Below are positions 4,975 through 14,937 of a stretch of 45,035 bases of DNA, one piece after another. Under the pieces are notes generated by a model. The model ran no database searches, was not told the DNA's origin, and worked only from the letters and a program-made list of their open reading frames with translations. Made by a program: the position numbers and the translations under genes. Origin of the DNA: Salpingoeca rosetta (lineage: Eukaryota; Protista; Choanoflagellata); the NCBI GenBank assembly GCA_033442325.1, contig JAWQFM010000020.1, positions 154,878-199,912 on the forward strand, written 5' to 3'. Every line of letters begins with the position of its first letter. Position 1 is the stretch's first letter.

Positions 4975-7561
4975 ATGTTTGCGTGCTGCAGAAGAGGGGG
5001 AAGATCTTCACCACCCGCTTCTTCTTGTCCTTCTTCAACCTCGTCTTCAGCGGTAGTGGATCCGCCCACCCCTGACCAGACGACAGTGGAAGCAACAGCG
5101 GAAGAGATAAGAACAACCAAGATCGGAGAACAAGGCGCAATCAACGACGAAGGTGCCAACGACAACAATAACCACAACAACTTAAACAACAACTTAAACA
5201 GCAACTTAAACAGCAACTTAGACAACTCCGAGGGCGTCATGGACTTGCCAACGCAACAGGGTCAACCTGCGCAGACAACTCAAGCACCCCAACCAGCACC
5301 GCCTCCGCCACCACCACCGCCACCGCCGCCGTACTACACTCCGCCAGCTCCGCCACCGCCACCCCTGCCCCCACAACAACAACAACAACAACAACAACGC
5401 CAGCCTCCATTTCGATCCAACACAGCCAATGCAAGCGTGCCTTCTTCCCAAGCAGAGGCAGAAGAGGCAGCAATGAGCTTGTTGGGCGTGTCTTCGGCCG
5501 GGTTACAGCAGTTCAAGGACTCCCTTGTCGCGCAGTTCCCAGACACGGCTGGCAAAATGACCACCCACGATGCCTGCAAGAACTTTGTCATGCCTAAGAC
5601 CAAGGAGCAGTGCTGCGCCTACGTGGAGCGGATGGACCCCAACCATGTGGCCAAAGCAACCGTGTTTGTCTCCCACGCTTGGCGATACAAGATCGTCGAC
5701 GTCCTCGACACTTTACTCGACTATGCCAAGGAAGAACACCAAAAGGGCAACCCAGAGCCTTGGTTCTGGTTCGATCTCTTCACCAACAACCAAAACATCG
5801 CCGCCAACCTCCCACAAGACTGGTACGATAGATGCCTGTGTGTGGGCATGTACGTGTGTGAGTACATGTGCGTGTACCTGTGAGGAAAGGCAATGCTGCT
5901 CGCTGCAATAGGATCTCTCCTCAGTGTCCATCTGCCGGCTACAACACTCACTCGCACACACACACACACACTCACTCACTCACTCACTCACTCCGCACAC
6001 TCGCTCGCACACTCACACACACACGCACTCACACACACACTCACACACACACACACACTCTCTCTCTCTCCGCACACTCACACACACGCACTCACTCACT
6101 CACTCTGCCCACACACGCACTCACTCACTCGCACACACACACACGCACTCACTCACTCACTCACTCACTCACTCTCACACATCTAGGTGGAGCACGACGT
6201 TTATGAAGTCAATCAAAGCGATTGGCCGCGTGCTGTTGGTGTTGACACCGTGGCACGACCCCGTGCCGCTCACACGCGCATGGTGCCTGTGGGAGATCTT
6301 CTGCAGTGCGAGCCAGGAGGGGGTGGAGCTGGCCATTCGGCTGCCCAGTGCGCAGCGCAACGCATTGCGACACGCGCTCCTTAACGAACACAACGCCATC
6401 ACCGCAGCCATGGTGCGTGTCCAAGCTGAACGGGCCCAGGCCTGGGACCAAAAGGACAAGAACATGATCTTCCGTGCCATCAAGAACACAGTGGGCTTCC
6501 CGCACCTCAACAGGATGGTGAAGGACCGCATGCGACAGTGGTGTTTGGAGCAGGTGATGCAGTTTGTACACGATGTCGAACAGGCCATGCACAACCCCAG
6601 TGACAGCAACACCACCACCGACACGACCACACCGACCACCAGCAACGACAGCAGCACACCCACTGCCAGGGGCCTCACGCGTCTGCTCGGCGACCTATGC
6701 TTTCGGGCAAGCCAGGTGATGTGCACCTTTGGCGAGAACGACAAGGCCATCGACCTGTGTGAGAAGAGCCTGGCTGCCACGCGTGCGCACTACGGTGACA
6801 CACACCCGAACGTCGCTTCGTGTTATTCGCAGCTGGGAGCTGTACTGCATCGCGTAGGCAAGATCGAGCGAGCCCTTGAGTGCTGTCAGCGCAGCACGCA
6901 CATGTATGAGGAGACCAACACCGACAACAGCCTCTCAGCAGCCAACGCCTACTCCACGCTCGGCGACACGTACCAGCGGCTCAACGACCTGGACAAGGCC
7001 TTGGACGCGTACAAGCGCTCGTTGCAGATCAAGGTGGACGCGGCGGGCCCACGCCACGCGTCCACCGCGCTCGCATACAACTCGCTCGGGCAGGTGTACA
7101 AGGCCAAGGGCGACGGGGACGAGGCGATTGCGCACTTTGAGAAGGCGTTGGAGATCAGGCTGGCCACCGTGGGGAAGAACCACCCGGAAACAGCCATCAC
7201 CTACAACGACATTGCAAACGCGTATTCTGCCAAGGGCGACCGAGAGCGCGCCATCGATTACTTGCACAGGAGCTTGGAGATCAAGGTGTGCACGCTTGGG
7301 GAGAAGCATGCCGAGACAGCTGCCACATACAACAACATCGCCATTGCGTACAGCAAGATGGGCGAACACGACAAGGCGGTGACAAACGCCCGCAAGACGG
7401 TTGAGATTTGCATGGCTGCAGTTGGTCCAAAACACCCGCACACACAGCTGGCTTTGAAGACGCAGAAGTGGGTGCAAGACAGGAAGCACCAACAACAAGA
7501 ACAACAAGAACTACAACCACCACCGCCGCCTCCGCCGCCTCCGCCGCCTCCACCACAATAG
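4975..7561 (+). CDS. TPR-repeat protein (kinesin-light-chain-type TPRs) with an N-terminal HET/TIR-like alpha/beta domain; choanoflagellate 'Mbre TPR' type
   Basis: Exons 4975-5822 and 6187-7561 (junction QDW|WSTTF). Motifs [18 protein letters not shown] and [11 protein letters not shown], then about six 42-aa repeats ([57 protein letters not shown]). Poly-Pro and poly-Gln linkers. Confidence 0.85.
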
Positions 7562-8088: not shown

Positions 8089-8131
<43 letters not shown>

Positions 8132-8158
8132 CAAAAAGCAAGAAAACATGTTGCGTTA

Positions 8159-10195
8159 TTAGAGCATGCGGGCGCACGTGGCGTGGTTGGTGGAGTAGGA
8201 AAAAGCCGCCACCTCCATAAGCGAAACCCCGCCCTCATACAGCCCAGCCACCTTCTCTGCAGAGGCATCCACGGCCCACGTGTTGAGGATGGCCTTGAGT
8301 TGTGCGTCCCCTGCAGATGGCGTGTGCACCTGCTGACTGCCAACACGCGCTGCGCTCGGCCGCCGCCAAACCAGCCGCCCGTCAACAACAAAATCCACGC
8401 CATCCTCCGTCCACAGGAACCCATATGTGTGGAACTCGTACGTGGCGTCAAAGCCAAGGTTCACCACGTGCTGCGCAGCCAACTGCCCGTTGGTCCAGAT
8501 GATGAGATACAGCCGCGTCGTGTCTGCGCCACGAAACTGCAGACTAATCTCGTTGTGCTCGCCGTTCCCGCCGTTGTCCAGCGCGCCGCTAAACGCCTGG
8601 AACGACGCAACAACGCCAGGGGTGCGACCGGGTCGAAGCACAGACCGGTAGCAGCCGTACCCCAAAAACTCCTGCGTGCGCACCTCCCCAGCGCCGCACG
8701 CATAGCGCGTGTGCGCAGAGGGACCGACGCTCAGCTCAAGGTTGCGGTGCGGCTCGGAGGACACTTTGGTCCCTTCAAATGGACACGCGTACGGAGAGCC
8801 ATTGGCCCAATTGGCCACCTCCCACACAGCGGGATCAAGGCCGTGCACAGGAAACGAAATGGTCGTGGTCGTCGTCGTTGCCTGGCTCGGCACATCACGT
8901 CGCTGCTGTGCATCCACACGTGCTGTCGGGGCTGCATGCAGCACAGTGCCATCATCGCTCCACCGACCACCACCACCACCTCCTCCTCGCCGATCAGCGC
9001 CACCCGCCCGCGCTGACTGCTGCTGCTGCTGCTGCTCGCGTTGGTGCTGCGCATTCTGCGTGAGCGAAGGGCTGTCATCTGGCCGCGTAGATGGCATTCC
9101 ACGTGACTGCTGCTGCTGCTGCTGTTGTTGTGGTGGTGCTTGTGTGCGTGGTGGTGGAAGCGCTGTGTCACGCTGATACTCGTGCTGATGTTGCTGCTGA
9201 TATTGTGGCTGCTGCACAACAGGCGGCGGGGAGAACGTGTCGCTAGGTGGTTCGGGCGCATCCATTGTTGCGGTGTAGGCGGTTACGGGCGGCGGAGTTG
9301 GTGGTGAAGAACTTGAACCGGAGTTCGTTGCCGTGGTTATTGGTACCTCTTCACCTGTCGTCCCACCCTCAGTGCTGGGACCACCACTACCACCAACAAC
9401 ACCACCGTCGGATGCACTACCTGCACTTGCATCGTGGAGCGTCTCGGACGTAAGTGGGGTGGACAGCGGGTCCAGCAGTGTGGCGTTACCGTCCACCGTC
9501 TCGGTCTCGTTGATGTCAAACACTTTGTCCAGGTCCAGGCCACGGTACCGCTTGCTTGAGTTTGGCATCATGATAATGTCAGAGTCGAAGAACGCCGCCG
9601 CCACAATGTACGACACCGCCACGGCGATGGTGGCTGCGACGAGAAAGTGGCTGAGGTTAATGTGGCCCGAGGTGAAGAGGCTGTAGACGTTGGCTGGACG
9701 CGATGCCCGCAACTGCTGCAGTCGAATCTGCGCCTGAAGACGTCGGCGCTCGTCAGCGATACGCGATTGTGACGTGTCCTCGGACGCAACTGCACTCGCA
9801 CGTGAGGAAGGGGGGGGGGTTGAATGTGGCGTGTTGTACGTTGTGTGTTTTGGTTGTGAAGGTGAGCGGTGCTGGTCAAAGGATAAAGGGGGAGGAGTAG
9901 GCAGTAGTAAATGGTGTGGCAATTGTCATAGAACAACAACAACAACAACTTAAACAACAACTTAAACAACAAAAACAAATTAAAAACAAAAACAACTTAA
10001 ACAACTTAAACAACAACTTAAACAACTTAAACAACAACTTAAACAACAACTTAAACAACAACAAGACGCGCACCTTCGTCCTGCGGGGCAAACGAGACGG
10101 ATCTGCCAGTCTCCCGGGCAATGACGCCCTTGCGCAGCGGTGTGGGCACCGGGTCTTCATCGCCATCAAGCTCCTCTTCGAAATCGAGCCCTTCT

Positions 10196-10230
<35 letters not shown>

Positions 10231-11355
10231 TTCTTCGTCTGCTTCCTCCGCCCCCTCCTCCTGAGTTTCTCGGGCCCTGGCGTCGGCGCCCTCGTCCTCC
10301 CCCGTGTTTCCAGCACCGTTGTGTGCTGTAGATGCGTCTGTATCGACCGGTGCGCTCGCCTGCTCATCAGTCTCCTCATCAACGGCTTCTTCAATGGCAT
10401 TCATTGCGGGCTCCTGCTGCCGCTGTTTCTGTTGCTGTTGTTGTGCTACTGCTGGTGCCGGTGCTGGTGCCGTTGGTGCTGCTGGTCGCGGCGACGACTG
10501 GTTGGACTTGGACCGGAATGACGATGACGACACTGCGCTTGCGTTTGGACTGCGTGCAGGCGTGCCCATGCGCGATCCTACCGCTGACGATGATGGTGTT
10601 GCTGCTGTGCGCGGTGCCACACCCTGCCGTGGCGTGGACGTGGACATACCACCACCAGCAGCAGCAGCGCCGGTCGAGCTGATGTTGAGGCCTTTGCTGC
10701 CGCTGAGACTGGTGTCGTTCATGTGGCCCCACGTGTCGTTGCGCACAGACAGAATCTGCTCGTAAAAGTTGCCCGCATCAACCGTACCCCAGAACCTGGG
10801 GATGCCAACAAATTGCAGCGGTGGTCGTGGTGATGGGTGGTGTTGGTGAGAATAAGTGGTGTCAAAGGTAAGGGGATGTATGGTTGAATGTGTGGCAGAC
10901 CATGAGAAGTGTGGGTGTGGGTGAAGGGGGGGAGGGGGTGGCGGGTGGCGGAGGAAGTGCAAGTGACAACTTGGTTTGGGGATGGGTGCCACACTACTCA
11001 CTTCTCCATGGCGTCTCTGGTGGCGAGTGTTGGGGCAACCTCGGCCGGGACCTTGCAGGCAATGAACTTGAACTTGTCGTCCTTCCGTCGCTGCTGCTGT
11101 TCCTCCGACACGGGCTTGCGGTGGATGGTCACCGTGATGCTCTCCCCTGCACGTGCATCGTGTAAGGTCGTGGGTGCAGTGTGAACGCGTGCACATGTGT
11201 ATAGATGACGATGATGCACAGATGCGTGCATGTGATGTGTGTGATGTGTGTGAAGAAACAAATATATTGCACGCGTGCTCGTGTGCGTGTGCAACCCGGC
11301 GGGCGACCAACTGCAGGTGAGACAGGACGCGTGGAAGTGCAATTTCGGACAACTT

Positions 11356-11421
<66 letters not shown>

Positions 11422-11779
11422 CCTTTTATACCAATGGCAAGGGCTGACCTGTTGGGATGACGGTGAGCTTTGGCTTGACGCGGTAGCGGTCGGAAGATGT
11501 CGTGCGCACACGATAGATGATGGTGCTGTCGCATGTGTTGCTGATCTCAACCATCTCAACAGCATCCTTCTCCAGACTGCCCGAAAACACAATCTGCCAA
11601 AGACGGATACGTGTGTGTTGTGAGAGAGCGCTCATACAAATGCCACTTGCGTGCGTGTGTGTCTGCAGCATTGGTTCCATGATGTCACAGCTGACACGAA
11701 TTCAGAGAAATGCGAATTCTCTCCAACACGCCAAGCGGGCACCCATGCGCAACCACCCAAACACCCACACACACACACA

Positions 11780-11822
<43 letters not shown>

Positions 11823-11920
11823 TACACACACACATCACACATTATACACACACACACATCACACATTATACACACACACACATCACACATTATACACCCA
11901 CACCCACACACACACCCACA

Positions 11921-11998
<78 letters not shown>

Positions 11999-12789
11999 TT
12001 GCACACTCGCTCGTGGCCAGCGCACCTCCCATTCCGGGTTGAGCTTGAAGAGACGGAAGCTGTCAAAGTCGTACATGCCGAGCTCATCCACCTCGTCCAT
12101 CGTTGCAACGCTCTCCACATCCATCCACATCTCCGACGGCGGGCCGCCTGGGAAGCCGCGTAGGTGTGTGTATGTGTGTGCGTGCGTGTGCGTTGTGTTT
12201 GGTGATGCAAGGGTCACTATGAGTGAGGAGGTGTTTGGCGTTGTTGTTGTTGTTCGCAAGCATGACCAAGGAGACAAGTGCCAAACTCGAATATCTGCAC
12301 CCAACAACTACACACACACATACACATGCCGCAATCACTTGTGGGACGAGTATTGATTCAGCACGATGCAACTCACTTGCGAGTGTTTTGCTCCACTCAG
12401 CAACCTTCTGCTTTGAGAAGCTCCGGCGTGCTTGAGCGCGTGCCGAGACTACAGCGAGTGAGGAAGGGAGAAGAGGAAGAAAAACGTGGTGGTGGTGGTG
12501 GTGGTGGCCGTGGTGGTGGTGCAGCAGCAAGGGACAGGGAGGACAAGGCGACAACAAGTGGCGGGTGCACCAGCAGAACGTCATACACGTACACACTCAT
12601 AGACAAACGACCAACAATATCAAATGGCTTATACACACAACTCACCCTTTTCTGAGCCTGTGCAAGGATTGGCATCATTGCATGGTTCAAGAGACAGAGC
12701 GCGTGCATTGTATGTGTGTGTGAGTTGGCGAGCGATGAATGTAATAAAGGGATGATCGCTATGCACGTGCACGTTAAGAATTAAGAGGG

Positions 12790-13300: not shown

Positions 13301-14937
13301 CTGTTTGCTTGTATCAATGTGCGCGATCAAGTGTGTCTTGTCCGTGCGCGTTGAGGATTGAATGCATATGCGCGCGAGCATTCGCTCTGCAAATCCTTCA
13401 TTGGCTCGTGTAGACAAGCACGTGTCCGCTTACGCTTCAGGTGGCCCTTGTGGTTATCGAGGCGGTTGTTGACGTCAATGTACGTGTCCAGTTCCTCCAC
13501 ATTCACCTGCGCAAATGCCTCCAGCTCCTGAACCAGTGGATGTGGATGCGACGCGTTGCATGTGAGATGCAAATGAAGTGCGCGCTCACAACCTCACCGA
13601 ACGCTCTCTCTCTCTCTCTCTTGCAGGGAATTGGACCATGCAACCATACACACAACACGCACACAACACACGCACACAACACACACATACACATACGACA
13701 CACACACACAACAGGCACACACACATACACATATGACACACACGCACACACACAACACGAACCAGTTCTGTGAGCCAGTGCTTGACGAGGTCCCAGAGGC
13801 CACTCGTGAACCATGGTTTCTCCAGCAGCAGCATCAGCCCAAGCACACCGGGGTAAAAATCGCGGAAGATATCAACAAGAAACCGGAAGTACTCCACGTC
13901 GATGTTTGCAGGGCCTGCAGCGGTGGTGGTGGCGGCGGCAGGTTGGCTCGGAGAAGAAGAAGAGCACCCGATACACAAGACGGACGAAATAATTGACACA
14001 CGCACACATACAGTACTTGAACACAAACTTGAACACATTCATGAACACATCCACGAACGCACGCACACACACACACATGTGTCACCGGCACTTACCGCAG
14101 CCCTCCATGTCGACAACGATGGTGATTTCCTCCGGTTCTCCACGGGCACGCAGCGCCTGCAACTGCTCCTCAATCACCAAGATGGTGAGCGCCTTCATGG
14201 AGGCGAGGCGGTGCGAGTCGCCCTTTTGGTGGCGGGCCATGCGCAGCGTGCCGACGGGGCGGCCGTCACGGTCCCGGCCCAGGAAGAAGAACGCGTTGGC
14301 GGCAAGCACGCTGTCGTCCACAATGCTGCGGTTGAGTGTCGACACAAACTGCTTGCGCCACCGCAGGCACCGCTCGAGCATGGCAAACGCCTCGGAGCGC
14401 TGCATGCTCTTGGCCAGGACAAACGAGGCCACATACTCCGGGTCGTTGCGAACGCGGTCGACATCTTGCGGGTCGTACCGCGCCTGCATCTTGCTGGACA
14501 GCGCTGTGGACCACCCCCATGGTTGAGAGACGCGAAAGGTACACGCACAACAACCGTGCATGTTTGACGGTGAGTGTTGTGGCATTGACTGACCGTCTTC
14601 GCTCATCAGCCATTTGGGCGGGAATCGACATGCCCAACATTGCGTACACACACGCACGCACGCACAAACAAACAAACAAACAAACAAACAAACAAACAAA
14701 CAAACAAACAAACAAACAAACAAACAAACAAACAAACAAACAAACAAACACATGCGTACCTTCATAAGTGGAGAGGAACTTCTTTTGAATCCATGTGATG
14801 GATTCGTGTTCGACCTGCTCAACACCAGCCGGGATGAGGCGCGGGCGGGGATAAACGGGCACAAGACGGTGTGAGTCAAAGTGGGGGAGAAGGAGAAAGA
14901 GGACGAGAGGGGAAAGGGTGAGACGACGTGACCGAGT

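What the first reader, a model, noticed from the sequence alone, without database searches (positions are those of the whole stretch)
8190..8860. Intron-less, bacterial-lichenase-like GH16 pseudo-enzyme (ExDxE -> ExSxQ)
Seen: the motif at 8551-8537 reads E-I-S-L-Q, with the flanking lichenase hallmarks intact (GxDTT, TNG, LGFDA, FHTY, VDG). Established: GH16 catalysis uses nucleophile E, helper D and acid/base E. Catalytically dead GH16 domains serve as beta-glucan pattern-recognition proteins in invertebrates, but those derive from the laminarinase-type branch. Inference: two of three catalytic residues are lost while the fold is retained, suggesting an independently evolved glucan-binding lectin. 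The domain sits in one uninterrupted exon in an otherwise intron-dense gene and resembles Bacillus-type enzymes, compatible with horizontal acquisition and exon capture.
Basis: partly seen in the sequence, partly recalled or inferred. Interest (0 to 1): 0.75.

Follow-up and report, generated by a model that had tools for sequence, protein, structure and literature searches.

The report
Dead bacterial-type glucanase domain in choanoflagellate
The last exon of a choanoflagellate membrane-tether gene ends in a domain that most likely came from a bacterial sugar-cutting enzyme, has lost its cutting residues but been kept by selection, so it probably now binds rather than cleaves something; what it binds is unknown.

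Summary
Window 8162-8860 (minus strand) encodes a 233-residue GH16 beta-jelly-roll (Pfam E 4e-19; AlphaFold pLDDT 95; TM 0.8-0.9 to bacterial lichenases). Its catalytic strand reads E-I-S-L-Q at exactly 8551-8537.

- **Gene context:** the genome is Salpingoeca rosetta. The domain ends a 1.6-kb terminal exon of an intron-rich gene (about 15138 to 8159) that also encodes CRAL-TRIO, MSP and one transmembrane helix, a MOSPD2-like layout.
- **Family:** ExSxQ (one ExAxQ) occurs in the Barroeca monosierra orthologue and in four environmental relatives, which form one clade. All but one of the other 232 aligned domains keep E-D-E.
- **Origin:** the nearest active relatives are bacterial GH16_21 enzymes of the ExoK-like branch (His, not Trp, before the nucleophile), not the Bacillus branch. 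Bacterial origin is well supported, but an AU test did not prove nesting.
- **Function:** the cleft is not intact. The -1 Phe varies, the +1 Trp is Val in all members and an invariant Arg was gained. A beta-glucan lectin is therefore unsupported; a remodelled, non-catalytic luminal or extracellular binding module is likeliest.
- **Selection:** the domain has dN 0.23 against 0.98 in the adjacent linker.

The scan has one other first-reader note on this same window and none on other DNA.

The parts
8162..8860 (-). GH16 (GH16_21/ExoK-like) pseudo-enzyme domain, 233 residues (residues 355-587 of the open frame 9922-8159)
   Evidence: Pfam PF00722 E 4e-19. PDB lichenases E 9e-31. AlphaFold2 pLDDT 95. 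Foldseek TM 0.81-0.90 to 3wvj, 1gbg, 3i4i, 3o5s and 1u0a.
8537..8551 (-). Former catalytic strand E-I-S-L-Q. The nucleophile Glu is kept, the helper Asp is Ser and the acid/base Glu is Gln. The next cleft-facing residue is Arg (8531-8533), where bacteria have Leu.
   Evidence: Sequence read. Column counts: 231 of 238 aligned domains have E-D-E, and only the six family members have E-S-Q or E-A-Q. Arg is invariant in the family.
8159..8161 (-). Stop codon TAA, followed by a (GT)n microsatellite in the 3' flank
8861..9517 (-). Low-complexity Ser/Thr/Pro/Gln/Gly-rich linker between the membrane helix and the domain (residues 136-354)
   Evidence: Translation. Only 27% identity to the Barroeca orthologue, dN 0.98.
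9587..9646 (-). Single predicted transmembrane helix (20 hydrophobic residues, Phe93-Phe112 of the open frame), with an Arg-rich coil on its N-terminal side
   Evidence: Translation. A hydropathy scan of the orthologue P0151 finds exactly one segment, 809-834, which aligns here.
8159..9789 (-). Terminal exon (1631 nt) encoding coil, transmembrane helix, linker and GH16-like domain
   Evidence: Acceptor AG at 9791-9790 and donor GT at 10073-10072, phase 1, making codon G+TT = Val. The Barroeca contig L003 has an intron at the same place, and the EukProt model P0151 joins the same residues.
9790..10073 (-). Last intron (284 nt), made largely of a GTTGTTTAAGTT-like tandem repeat
11001..12157 (-). 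Exons encoding the MSP (major sperm protein) domain
   Evidence: Pfam PF00635 on exon pieces 11438-11599 (E 1.1e-8) and 11001-11189 (E 1.1e-3). tblastn of P0151 residues 352-493.
13435..14823 (-). Exons encoding the CRAL-TRIO lipid-binding domain
   Evidence: Pfam PF00650 on frames 13589-14038 and 14085-14879 and on 13763-13915. tblastn of P0151 residues 32-270.

Best explanation
Window 8162-8860 encodes the C-terminal domain of a roughly 1,300-residue single-pass membrane protein of Salpingoeca rosetta. The layout is CRAL-TRIO, MSP, an acidic disordered region, a basic coil, one transmembrane helix, a 219-residue disordered stalk, then the GH16-like domain.

The domain descends from a bacterial GH16_21 enzyme of the ExoK-like branch. 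It was acquired before S. rosetta and Barroeca monosierra split, and probably earlier, because environmental relatives branch deeper.

After acquisition it lost the acid/base Glu (to Gln), the helper Asp (to Ser), the +1 Trp (to Val) and the constraint on the -1 Phe. It gained an invariant Arg on the cleft face and an invariant Cys pair.

It therefore cannot work as a normal retaining glycosidase. It acts as a non-catalytic binding module with a remodelled cleft, displayed in the ER lumen or outside the cell on a flexible stalk, while the CRAL-TRIO and MSP domains face the cytosol.

Shown here: the fold, the substitutions and their conservation, the gene structure, purifying selection, and closest kinship to bacterial ExoK-like enzymes. 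Inferred: loss of hydrolysis, the topology, and that the remaining function is ligand binding. Unknown: the ligand.
For: - **Motif and fold:**
- **Family-wide substitutions:** six members in one clade (100/99 support) have ExSxQ or ExAxQ plus an invariant Arg, while 231 of 238 aligned domains keep E-D-E.
- **Selection:** the domain has dN 0.227 against 0.98 in the adjacent linker, with dS saturated. GC3 is 0.73 in S. rosetta and 0.39 in Barroeca, so each copy matches its host.
- **Kinship:** the best per-domain scores (135-145 bits, 38-43% identity) are to His-Asn-Glu-type bacterial enzymes of Steroidobacteraceae, Anaerolineales and Vibrionaceae. Shared markers are the DNGGNGxHNEI loop, loop length 11, GYGC and a W-x-VD...AG tail. 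The careful tree places the clade inside a 48-row His-type set (97/92) and a 30-row set (99/98). The reduced tree places it inside a 27-row core His-type set (97/93).
- **Literature:** PMC8711696 splits GH16_21 into a Firmicutes licheninase clade and an ExoK clade with the same His/Trp marker. It lists only Neocallimastigomycota and charophyte EG16-2 as eukaryotic offshoots.
- **Architecture:**
- **Topology:** an invariant Cys pair (positions 26 and 55) sits where the 1gbg Cys residues align and is absent from the His-type bacterial group. This fits an oxidising compartment. The Arg-rich flank lies on the N-terminal side of the helix.
Against: - No assay exists, so loss of activity is inferred from what is known of GH16 catalysis.
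- The nucleophile Glu is invariant in all six members. A pure lectin does not obviously need it.
- With distant outgroups, the AU test did not reject a tree that holds all 79 bacterial rows together (p-AU 1; that tree scored 85 log-likelihood units higher). Nesting inside bacteria, and hence the direction of transfer, rests on taxon distribution and shared markers, not on a decisive tree.
- The clade has a long stem (0.9-1.75 changes per site), so long-branch effects are in play.
- Sugar-binding positions of lichenases (equivalents of E63, R65, F92, Q119, N121, E131) vary within the family. The domain may therefore not bind any glycan.
- Localisation (ER or cell surface) is untested.
- The four environmental members have no known organism.
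Confidence: 0.7

Rival explanations
1. The domain is kept as a non-glycan module. It could be a protein-protein interaction or oligomerisation domain, or a bulky luminal spacer or anchor for the tether, with the old sugar cleft simply decayed.
For: The -1 Phe, the +1 Trp and several polar sugar-binding positions are lost or vary among the six members. Only about 22 positions are invariant in the family, and many of them are core residues.
Against: E104, S106, Q108 and R110 alternate along one strand and so face the same side of the sheet, the former cleft. E104, Q108 and R110 are invariant in all six members, and position 106 is Ser in five and Ala in one. W122 is invariant, and W195 is kept in the five members that cover it. 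This points to a conserved site in the cleft rather than decay.
Confidence: 0.2
2. The domain is still an enzyme with non-canonical chemistry. The retained nucleophile Glu would act on a substrate with a good or anionic leaving group, held by the new Arg. This would resemble GH1 myrosinases, which work with Gln in place of the acid/base. Alternatively it could act as a transglycosylase.
For: The nucleophile Glu, the Gln and the Arg are invariant in all six members. The analogy to myrosinase is from my own knowledge and was not tested.
Against: The helper Asp, the -1 platform and the +1 Trp are also gone. No GH16 enzyme with this chemistry is known to me. According to PMC6827312, only about 1% of GH16 members outside GH16_4 have lost one or both catalytic residues.
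Confidence: 0.07
3. The domain was not acquired from bacteria. It is an old, vertically inherited eukaryotic GH16 lineage, sister to all GH16_21, that survives only in a few choanoflagellates.
For: The AU test did not reject all bacterial rows as one group, with the clade next to the outgroup.
Against: In a search of 1.84 billion representatives, no hit outside the six-member family carried a eukaryotic label among those whose sources were looked up. Scores to the His-type bacteria are far higher than to the Trp-type bacteria. The clade shares a loop insertion and the GYGC marker with one bacterial subgroup. The grouping with the outgroup joins the two longest branches in the data set.
Confidence: 0.05

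Closest known systems
Bacterial GH16_21 ExoK-like endo-beta-1,3-1,4-glycanases (for example Ensifer meliloti ExoK; His-Asn-Glu-Ile-Asp-Ile-Glu type enzymes of Proteobacteria, Chloroflexota and others)
   Same: Same fold, no beta-bulge, 35-45% identity, His instead of Trp before the nucleophile, the DNGGNG loop, GYGC and the W-x-VD tail. The clade definition is from PMC8711696.
   Different: The Asp and the acid/base Glu are replaced, the +1 Trp is Val, and an invariant Arg and a Cys pair were gained. The domain is eukaryotic, fused behind a transmembrane helix, and scores far below the NCBIfam ExoK equivalog cut-off (72.6 bits against 350).
Firmicutes licheninases (Bacillus licheniformis 1GBG, B. 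subtilis 3O5S, 3WVJ)
   Same: These are the best solved structural matches: TM 0.81-0.90, rmsd about 2 A, E 9e-31 by sequence.
   Different: They form a separate clade (34 rows, Trp-Asp-Glu type) in the tree, with a shorter loop before the nucleophile. They are active, with Phe92 and Trp192 platforms (PMC6827312).
Invertebrate beta-1,3-glucan recognition proteins (betaGRP, GNBP, LGBP; GH16_4)
   Same: GH16 domains that lost catalytic residues and were kept as non-catalytic proteins. About 9% of GH16_4 members lack one or both catalytic residues (PMC6827312).
   Different: They come from the laminarinase-type, beta-bulge branch. They are secreted immune proteins and are not membrane-anchored. 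The choanoflagellate domain derives from GH16_21, so the loss is independent.
Mycobacterium tuberculosis Rv0315 (PDB 4WZF), described by its depositors as a pseudo beta-1,3-glucanase
   Same: A GH16-fold protein without glucanase activity. It appears among the Foldseek hits (rank 48, TM about 0.7).
   Different: It is bacterial, of the laminarinase type, with only 16% identity, and is not membrane-tethered.
Animal MOSPD2 (CRAL-TRIO + MSP + C-terminal membrane anchor; ER contact-site tether)
   Same: Same order of CRAL-TRIO, MSP and a single transmembrane helix. It is the only CRAL-TRIO-plus-MSP gene detected in the genome; only two MSP hits were found genome-wide.
   Different: From my own knowledge, MOSPD2 is tail-anchored with almost nothing beyond the helix. 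Here about 475 residues (stalk plus GH16-like domain) follow the helix, which implies co-translational type II insertion.
Charophyte EG16-2 and Neocallimastigomycota lichenases (other eukaryotic offshoots of GH16_21)
   Same: They are precedents for transfer of GH16_21 genes from bacteria into eukaryotes (PMC8711696, PMC6827312).
   Different: Both are described as enzymes in those papers. The choanoflagellate family has lost two of the three catalytic residues and is a module of a membrane protein.

Membership tests
Glycoside hydrolase family 16 (fold and sequence family, Pfam PF00722) | Profile match above the curated cut-off | tested here: met
   69.2 bits against a cut-off of 22, E 4e-19.
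Glycoside hydrolase family 16 (fold and sequence family, Pfam PF00722) | Beta-jelly-roll fold superposable on solved GH16 enzymes | tested here: met
   pLDDT 95. TM 0.81-0.90 and rmsd 1.9-2.6 A to nine lichenase chains.
Glycoside hydrolase family 16 as an active enzyme | Catalytic ExDxE (or ExDxxE) triad | tested here: not met
   The motif is E-I-S-L-Q. The same holds in all six family members.
GH16_21 (licheninase/ExoK subfamily) | Bulge-less spacing of the catalytic strand, and closest similarity to GH16_21 members | tested here: met
   The spacing is E-x-S-x-Q. The best PDB, NCBIfam and genome hits are all GH16_21-type.
GH16_21 (licheninase/ExoK subfamily) | Phe platform at subsite -1 and strictly conserved Trp at subsite +1 (PMC6827312) | tested here: not met
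   The Phe92 equivalent is Gln88 (Q, Q, Y, M, F, M across the family). The Trp192 equivalent is Val204 in all five members that cover it.
GH16_21 (licheninase/ExoK subfamily) | Assignment by the CAZy subfamily HMM or similarity network | not testable with these tools
ExoK-like clade of GH16_21 | His instead of Trp at the cleft position before the nucleophile (PMC8711696) | tested here: met
   His102 is followed by Asn-Glu. 156 of the 232 aligned bacterial-type domains are His-type and 64 are Trp-type.
ExoK-like clade of GH16_21 | NCBIfam equivalog score (NF052392, cut-off 350 bits) | tested here: not met
   72.6 bits.
Invertebrate betaGRP/GNBP (GH16_4 pseudo-enzymes) | Descent from the laminarinase-type (beta-bulge) branch | tested here: not met
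   Laminarinase structures score TM about 0.75 at 16-18% identity, below the lichenases. The catalytic-strand spacing is bulge-less.
MOSPD2-like tether | CRAL-TRIO, then MSP, then one transmembrane helix | tested here: met
   Pfam on exon pieces and on the orthologue P0151. A single hydrophobic segment.
MOSPD2-like tether | Tail anchor, meaning the helix lies at the extreme C-terminus | tested here: not met
   475 residues follow the helix.
MOSPD2-like tether | FFAT-motif binding and ER localisation | not testable with these tools
   This needs experiments.

The most novel reading that the evidence does not exclude
In the S. rosetta / B. monosierra lineage of choanoflagellates, the only MOSPD2-type contact-site tether has become a transmembrane coupling device. 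A re-tooled bacterial ExoK-derived module on the luminal or outer side would recognise a specific, possibly acidic, glycan such as a bacterial exopolysaccharide or a secretory-pathway glycan. That would link glycan recognition to cytosolic MSP/FFAT tethering and CRAL-TRIO lipid handling. It would be a receptor built from a prey-derived enzyme.
Probability: 0.12. Interest if true: 0.8.

Novelty: new variant of a known kind. Interest (0 to 1): 0.55.

Why it matters
Catalytically dead GH16 domains are known, as are bacterial GH16_21 genes that moved into eukaryotes. I found no report of a GH16_21/ExoK-derived pseudo-enzyme, and none in choanoflagellates.

The published survey of horizontal transfer in S. 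rosetta lists only the other, laminarinase-like GH16 gene, at least in the part of its supplementary table that is held.

[quoted passage not shown] It is attached to the far side of the membrane of a protein type (VAP/MOSPD2) that is normally tail-anchored with no luminal part. S. rosetta is genetically tractable, so localisation, ligand and knockout phenotype can be tested directly.

Tried and rejected
- **First impression:** I first took the window for a trypanosomatid genome (long open frames, CA repeats).
- **Word-index protein search:** with the domain alone it found nothing, and with the Barroeca full-length protein it also found nothing. That tool misses relatives at 35-45% identity, so these blanks say nothing. 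The exhaustive representative search was used instead.
- **Genome scan:** the first scan failed for lack of a conserved stretch. It was repeated with a tighter alignment. The patterns used favoured His-Asn-Glu-type sequences, so the set of 80 loci is biased towards that group.
- **AU test:** it did not reject 'all bacteria together' and found a better-scoring constrained tree. I report this as a failure to prove nesting, probably caused by attraction between the two longest branches.
- **dN/dS:** it could not be computed because dS is saturated. I used the contrast of dN between the domain and the linker instead.
- **False lead:** a regular-expression hit suggested a bacterial E-V-S-L-N pseudo-enzyme (P0119). 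In the alignment that protein has a normal E-I-D-I-E.
- **Metagenome scan:** it gave only one further family member.
- Exons were searched separately by reference.
Full report
**1. What is in the sequence**

The 233-residue stretch encoded by 8162-8860 matches Pfam Glyco_hydro_16 at E 4e-19. It matches the NCBIfam BglS and ExoK models at E 5.9e-31 and 3.3e-20, both far below their equivalog cut-offs.

It also matches solved bacterial 1,3-1,4-beta-glucanases at E 9e-31 (3wvj) and 2e-24 (1gbg). In those alignments EIDIE lines up with EISLQ column for column. An AlphaFold2 model built on a 67-sequence alignment has mean pLDDT 95 and pTM 0.91. Its best Foldseek matches are nine lichenase chains at TM 0.81-0.90 and rmsd about 2 A. 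Laminarinases, XTH, EG16 and Crh come clearly behind.

**2. Which genome and which gene**

An earlier follow-up of this scan identified the genome as Salpingoeca rosetta. Consistent with that, the only close relative found is 71% identical in the domain and carries the EukProt label Barroeca monosierra.

The open frame 9922-8159 is not a whole gene. A splice acceptor (AG at 9791-9790) follows a pyrimidine-rich tract. A donor (GT at 10073-10072) in the upstream frame 10051-11592 joins it in phase 1, giving G+TT = Val. The Barroeca genomic contig L003 has an intron at the same point, and the EukProt model joins the same residues.

The 1315-residue Barroeca protein has CRAL-TRIO (122-259), MSP (389-480) and GH16 (1117-1270). 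It aligns colinearly to the window in twelve blocks from 15138 to 8195. Separate S. rosetta exon pieces hit CRAL_TRIO and Motile_Sperm.

The orthologue has exactly one hydrophobic segment, which corresponds to window 9587-9646. The terminal exon (9789-8159) therefore encodes, in order:
- a basic coil;
- the transmembrane helix;
- a 219-residue low-complexity stalk;
- the GH16-like domain.

However, the domain does not have an exon to itself.

Only two MSP hits exist in the genome and only one copy of this GH16 type. This looks like the organism's single MOSPD2-type gene.

**3. A small family, all with the same dead motif**

An exhaustive search of 1.84 billion representatives gave 1027 hits. 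Apart from the Barroeca orthologue, four representatives carry the same altered strand:
- P0003 (NEISVQ);
- P0007 (IEVSLQ);
- P0008 (NELSFQ);
- P0025 (QEIALQ, from a marine metatranscriptome).

In an alignment of 238 domains, 231 have Glu-Asp-Glu at the three catalytic columns and one has Ala-Asp-Glu. Only these six have Glu-Ser-Gln or Glu-Ala-Gln. The six form one clade with 100/99 support. A metagenome scan added one more, a close relative of P0007.

P0007 has the same coil-helix-stalk-domain order as S. rosetta. P0007 and P0008 lie in tandem on one 3.3-kb contig.

**4. Selection**

Between S. rosetta and Barroeca the domain is 71% identical with dN 0.227. The coil-helix segment is 64% identical with dN 0.30. 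The stalk is 27% identical with dN 0.98. Synonymous sites are saturated.

GC3 is 0.73 in S. rosetta and 0.39 in Barroeca, so each copy has the composition of its host. The domain is a maintained part of both genomes. It is neither a decaying relic nor a contaminant.

**5. Where it came from**

Per domain, the best-scoring active relatives are not the Bacillus or Clostridium enzymes, which score about 70-90 bits per domain. They are enzymes with His-Asn-Glu-Ile-Asp-Ile-Glu, from Steroidobacteraceae, other Gammaproteobacteria, Anaerolineales, Vibrionaceae and others, at 135-145 bits and 38-43% identity over nearly the whole domain.

S. rosetta shares with them the DNGGNGxHNEI loop (length 11, against 8 in most Trp-type enzymes), the GYGC motif and the W-x-VD...AG tail. 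Shinohara and Nishitani (PMC8711696) split GH16_21 into a Firmicutes licheninase clade and an ExoK clade that differ at exactly this His/Trp cleft position. They list only Neocallimastigomycota and charophyte EG16-2 as eukaryotic offshoots.

Three tree analyses bear on the origin:
- **Careful tree.** An IQ-TREE analysis (87 rows, LG+C20 PMSF, rooted on two Vibrio GH16 paralogues) puts the six-member clade inside a 30-row set (99/98) and a 48-row His-type set (97/92). That set is sister to a 34-row Trp-type set.
- **Reduced tree.** A 48-row tree without outgroups puts the clade inside a 27-row set made only of core His-type bacteria (97/93).
- **AU test.** The test of 'all 79 bacterial rows together' did not reject that arrangement. 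The constrained search in fact found a tree 85 log-likelihood units better (p-AU 1). That tree joins the clade's long stem (0.9-1.75 changes per site) to the very long outgroup branch (2.8), the classic long-branch situation.

I conclude that kinship with the ExoK-like bacterial branch is solid. Every neighbour whose source I could look up is bacterial. A bacterial origin is by far the most economical reading. Formal nesting, and the donor lineage, are not established.

Those structures score E 0.05 and 1e-6, against 1e-31 for lichenases.

**6. Is the sugar cleft intact?**

I used the HMMER alignment to 1gbg for numbering and column statistics over 232 bacterial-type domains.

Changes found in every family member:

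| Position in this domain | Bacterial residue | Residue in the family | Role in GH16_21 |
|---|---|---|---|
| 28 | Trp | Phe | conserved Trp; role not examined |
| 106 | Asp | Ser (Ala in P0025) | helper Asp |
| 108 | Glu | Gln | acid/base |
| 110 | Leu | Arg | next cleft-facing residue |
| 204 | Trp | Val | strictly conserved +1 Trp (PMC6827312) |

Other positions:
- The equivalent of the -1 platform Phe92 is Gln in S. rosetta and reads Q, Q, Y, M, F, M across the family.
- The equivalents of E63, R65, Q119, N121 and E131 also vary.
- Kept in the family are the nucleophile Glu104 (invariant), the equivalent of Tyr123 (Trp122, invariant) and the equivalent of Trp184 (Trp195, in all five members that cover it). 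Asn20 is kept in three of the four members that cover it.

The structural hallmarks are therefore intact, but subsites -1 and +1 are dismantled. At the same time a new, invariant Glu/Ser/Gln/Arg face has formed on the old catalytic strand. This does not look like a preserved mixed-linkage-glucan binding site. It looks like a remodelled site, or, less likely, no glycan site at all.

**7. Topology**

The Arg-rich flank lies on the N-terminal side of the helix. All family members that cover the region carry Cys at positions 26 and 55, where the two Cys of 1gbg align. From my own knowledge these form the Cys32-Cys61 disulfide of Bacillus lichenases. The His-type bacterial group lacks both Cys.

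A gained disulfide and a Ser/Thr/Pro-rich stalk fit a luminal or extracellular location for the domain, with CRAL-TRIO and MSP in the cytosol. This is inference. From my own knowledge, MOSPD2 and VAP are tail-anchored. A 475-residue extension beyond the helix would require co-translational insertion.

**8. How the fusion arose**

The domain shares its exon with the helix, so 'exon capture' of the bacterial piece alone is not what is seen.

In the P0007 relative, two contigs agree on a conserved GTAAG donor-like site, a short poorly conserved gap of about 60-75 nt, and a YAG acceptor-like site. After that the frame stays open into the coil, helix and domain. In L092 an ATGATG lies just before the donor, only about 330 nt downstream of the neighbouring gene's stop. 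That would make the helix-plus-domain unit a free-standing gene there, later fused to the MOSPD2-like gene in the S. rosetta/Barroeca lineage. This is a lead, not a result.

**9. Comparison with what is known, and novelty**

Dead GH16 domains are known:
- the invertebrate glucan-recognition proteins within GH16_4, where about 9% of members lack catalytic residues, against about 1% elsewhere in GH16 (PMC6827312);
- Rv0315 of M. tuberculosis (4WZF).

Bacterial GH16_21 genes have also entered eukaryotes before (PMC8711696).

I found no paper that mentions this gene, a GH16_21-derived pseudo-enzyme, or MOSPD2 in choanoflagellates. The S. rosetta horizontal-transfer survey lists only the other GH16 gene, PTSG_07675, in the part of its table that is held.

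I rate it a new variant of a known kind and moderately interesting.

Noticed in passing
L092:15-2313 (JGI metagenome 3300037348 contig) and L096:1-1439: Two ExSxQ-type GH16 genes (P0008, then P0007) lie in tandem on one strand of L092. Upstream of P0007's coding frame, L092 and L096 share a GTAAG donor-like site, a gap of about 60-75 nt and a YAG acceptor-like site. In L092 an ATGATG sits just before the donor. The helix-plus-domain unit may therefore be a free-standing two-exon gene in this unknown organism.
   Followed up: partly
L002 (G000:C20:388729-388842, outside the window): This is a second GH16 gene of S. rosetta, of the laminarinase type and split by introns. Only a 46-residue exon scores. 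It is probably PTSG_07675, which Matriano et al. (PMC7971027) list as a transfer candidate.
   Followed up: partly
window 9790-10073: The last intron of the gene consists largely of a tandem GTTGTTTAAGTT-like repeat. A (GT)n microsatellite follows the stop codon at about 8095-8150.
   Followed up: no
window 5924-7561 (+): The neighbouring open frame has a long TPR array resembling kinesin light chains. It is preceded by a His/Thr-rich stretch encoded by CA repeats. Another note of the scan covers it (s1-439012).
   Followed up: no
P0002, P0004, P0005, P0006, P0009, P0011 (proteins): The highest whole-protein scores in the representative search come from proteins with two or three tandem GH16 domains. 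P0002 also carries a dockerin and P0004 a CBM11, and P0005 is from a Clostridiaceae genome. Their rank reflects summed domain scores, not closeness: each domain scores only 70-105 bits.
   Followed up: yes
L006 and L024 (Photobacterium rosenbergii), L012 and L018 (P. satsumensis), L021 and L027 (P. lutimaris): Several marine Vibrionaceae carry two ExoK-like GH16_21 genes about 85-120 kb apart on the same contig.
   Followed up: no
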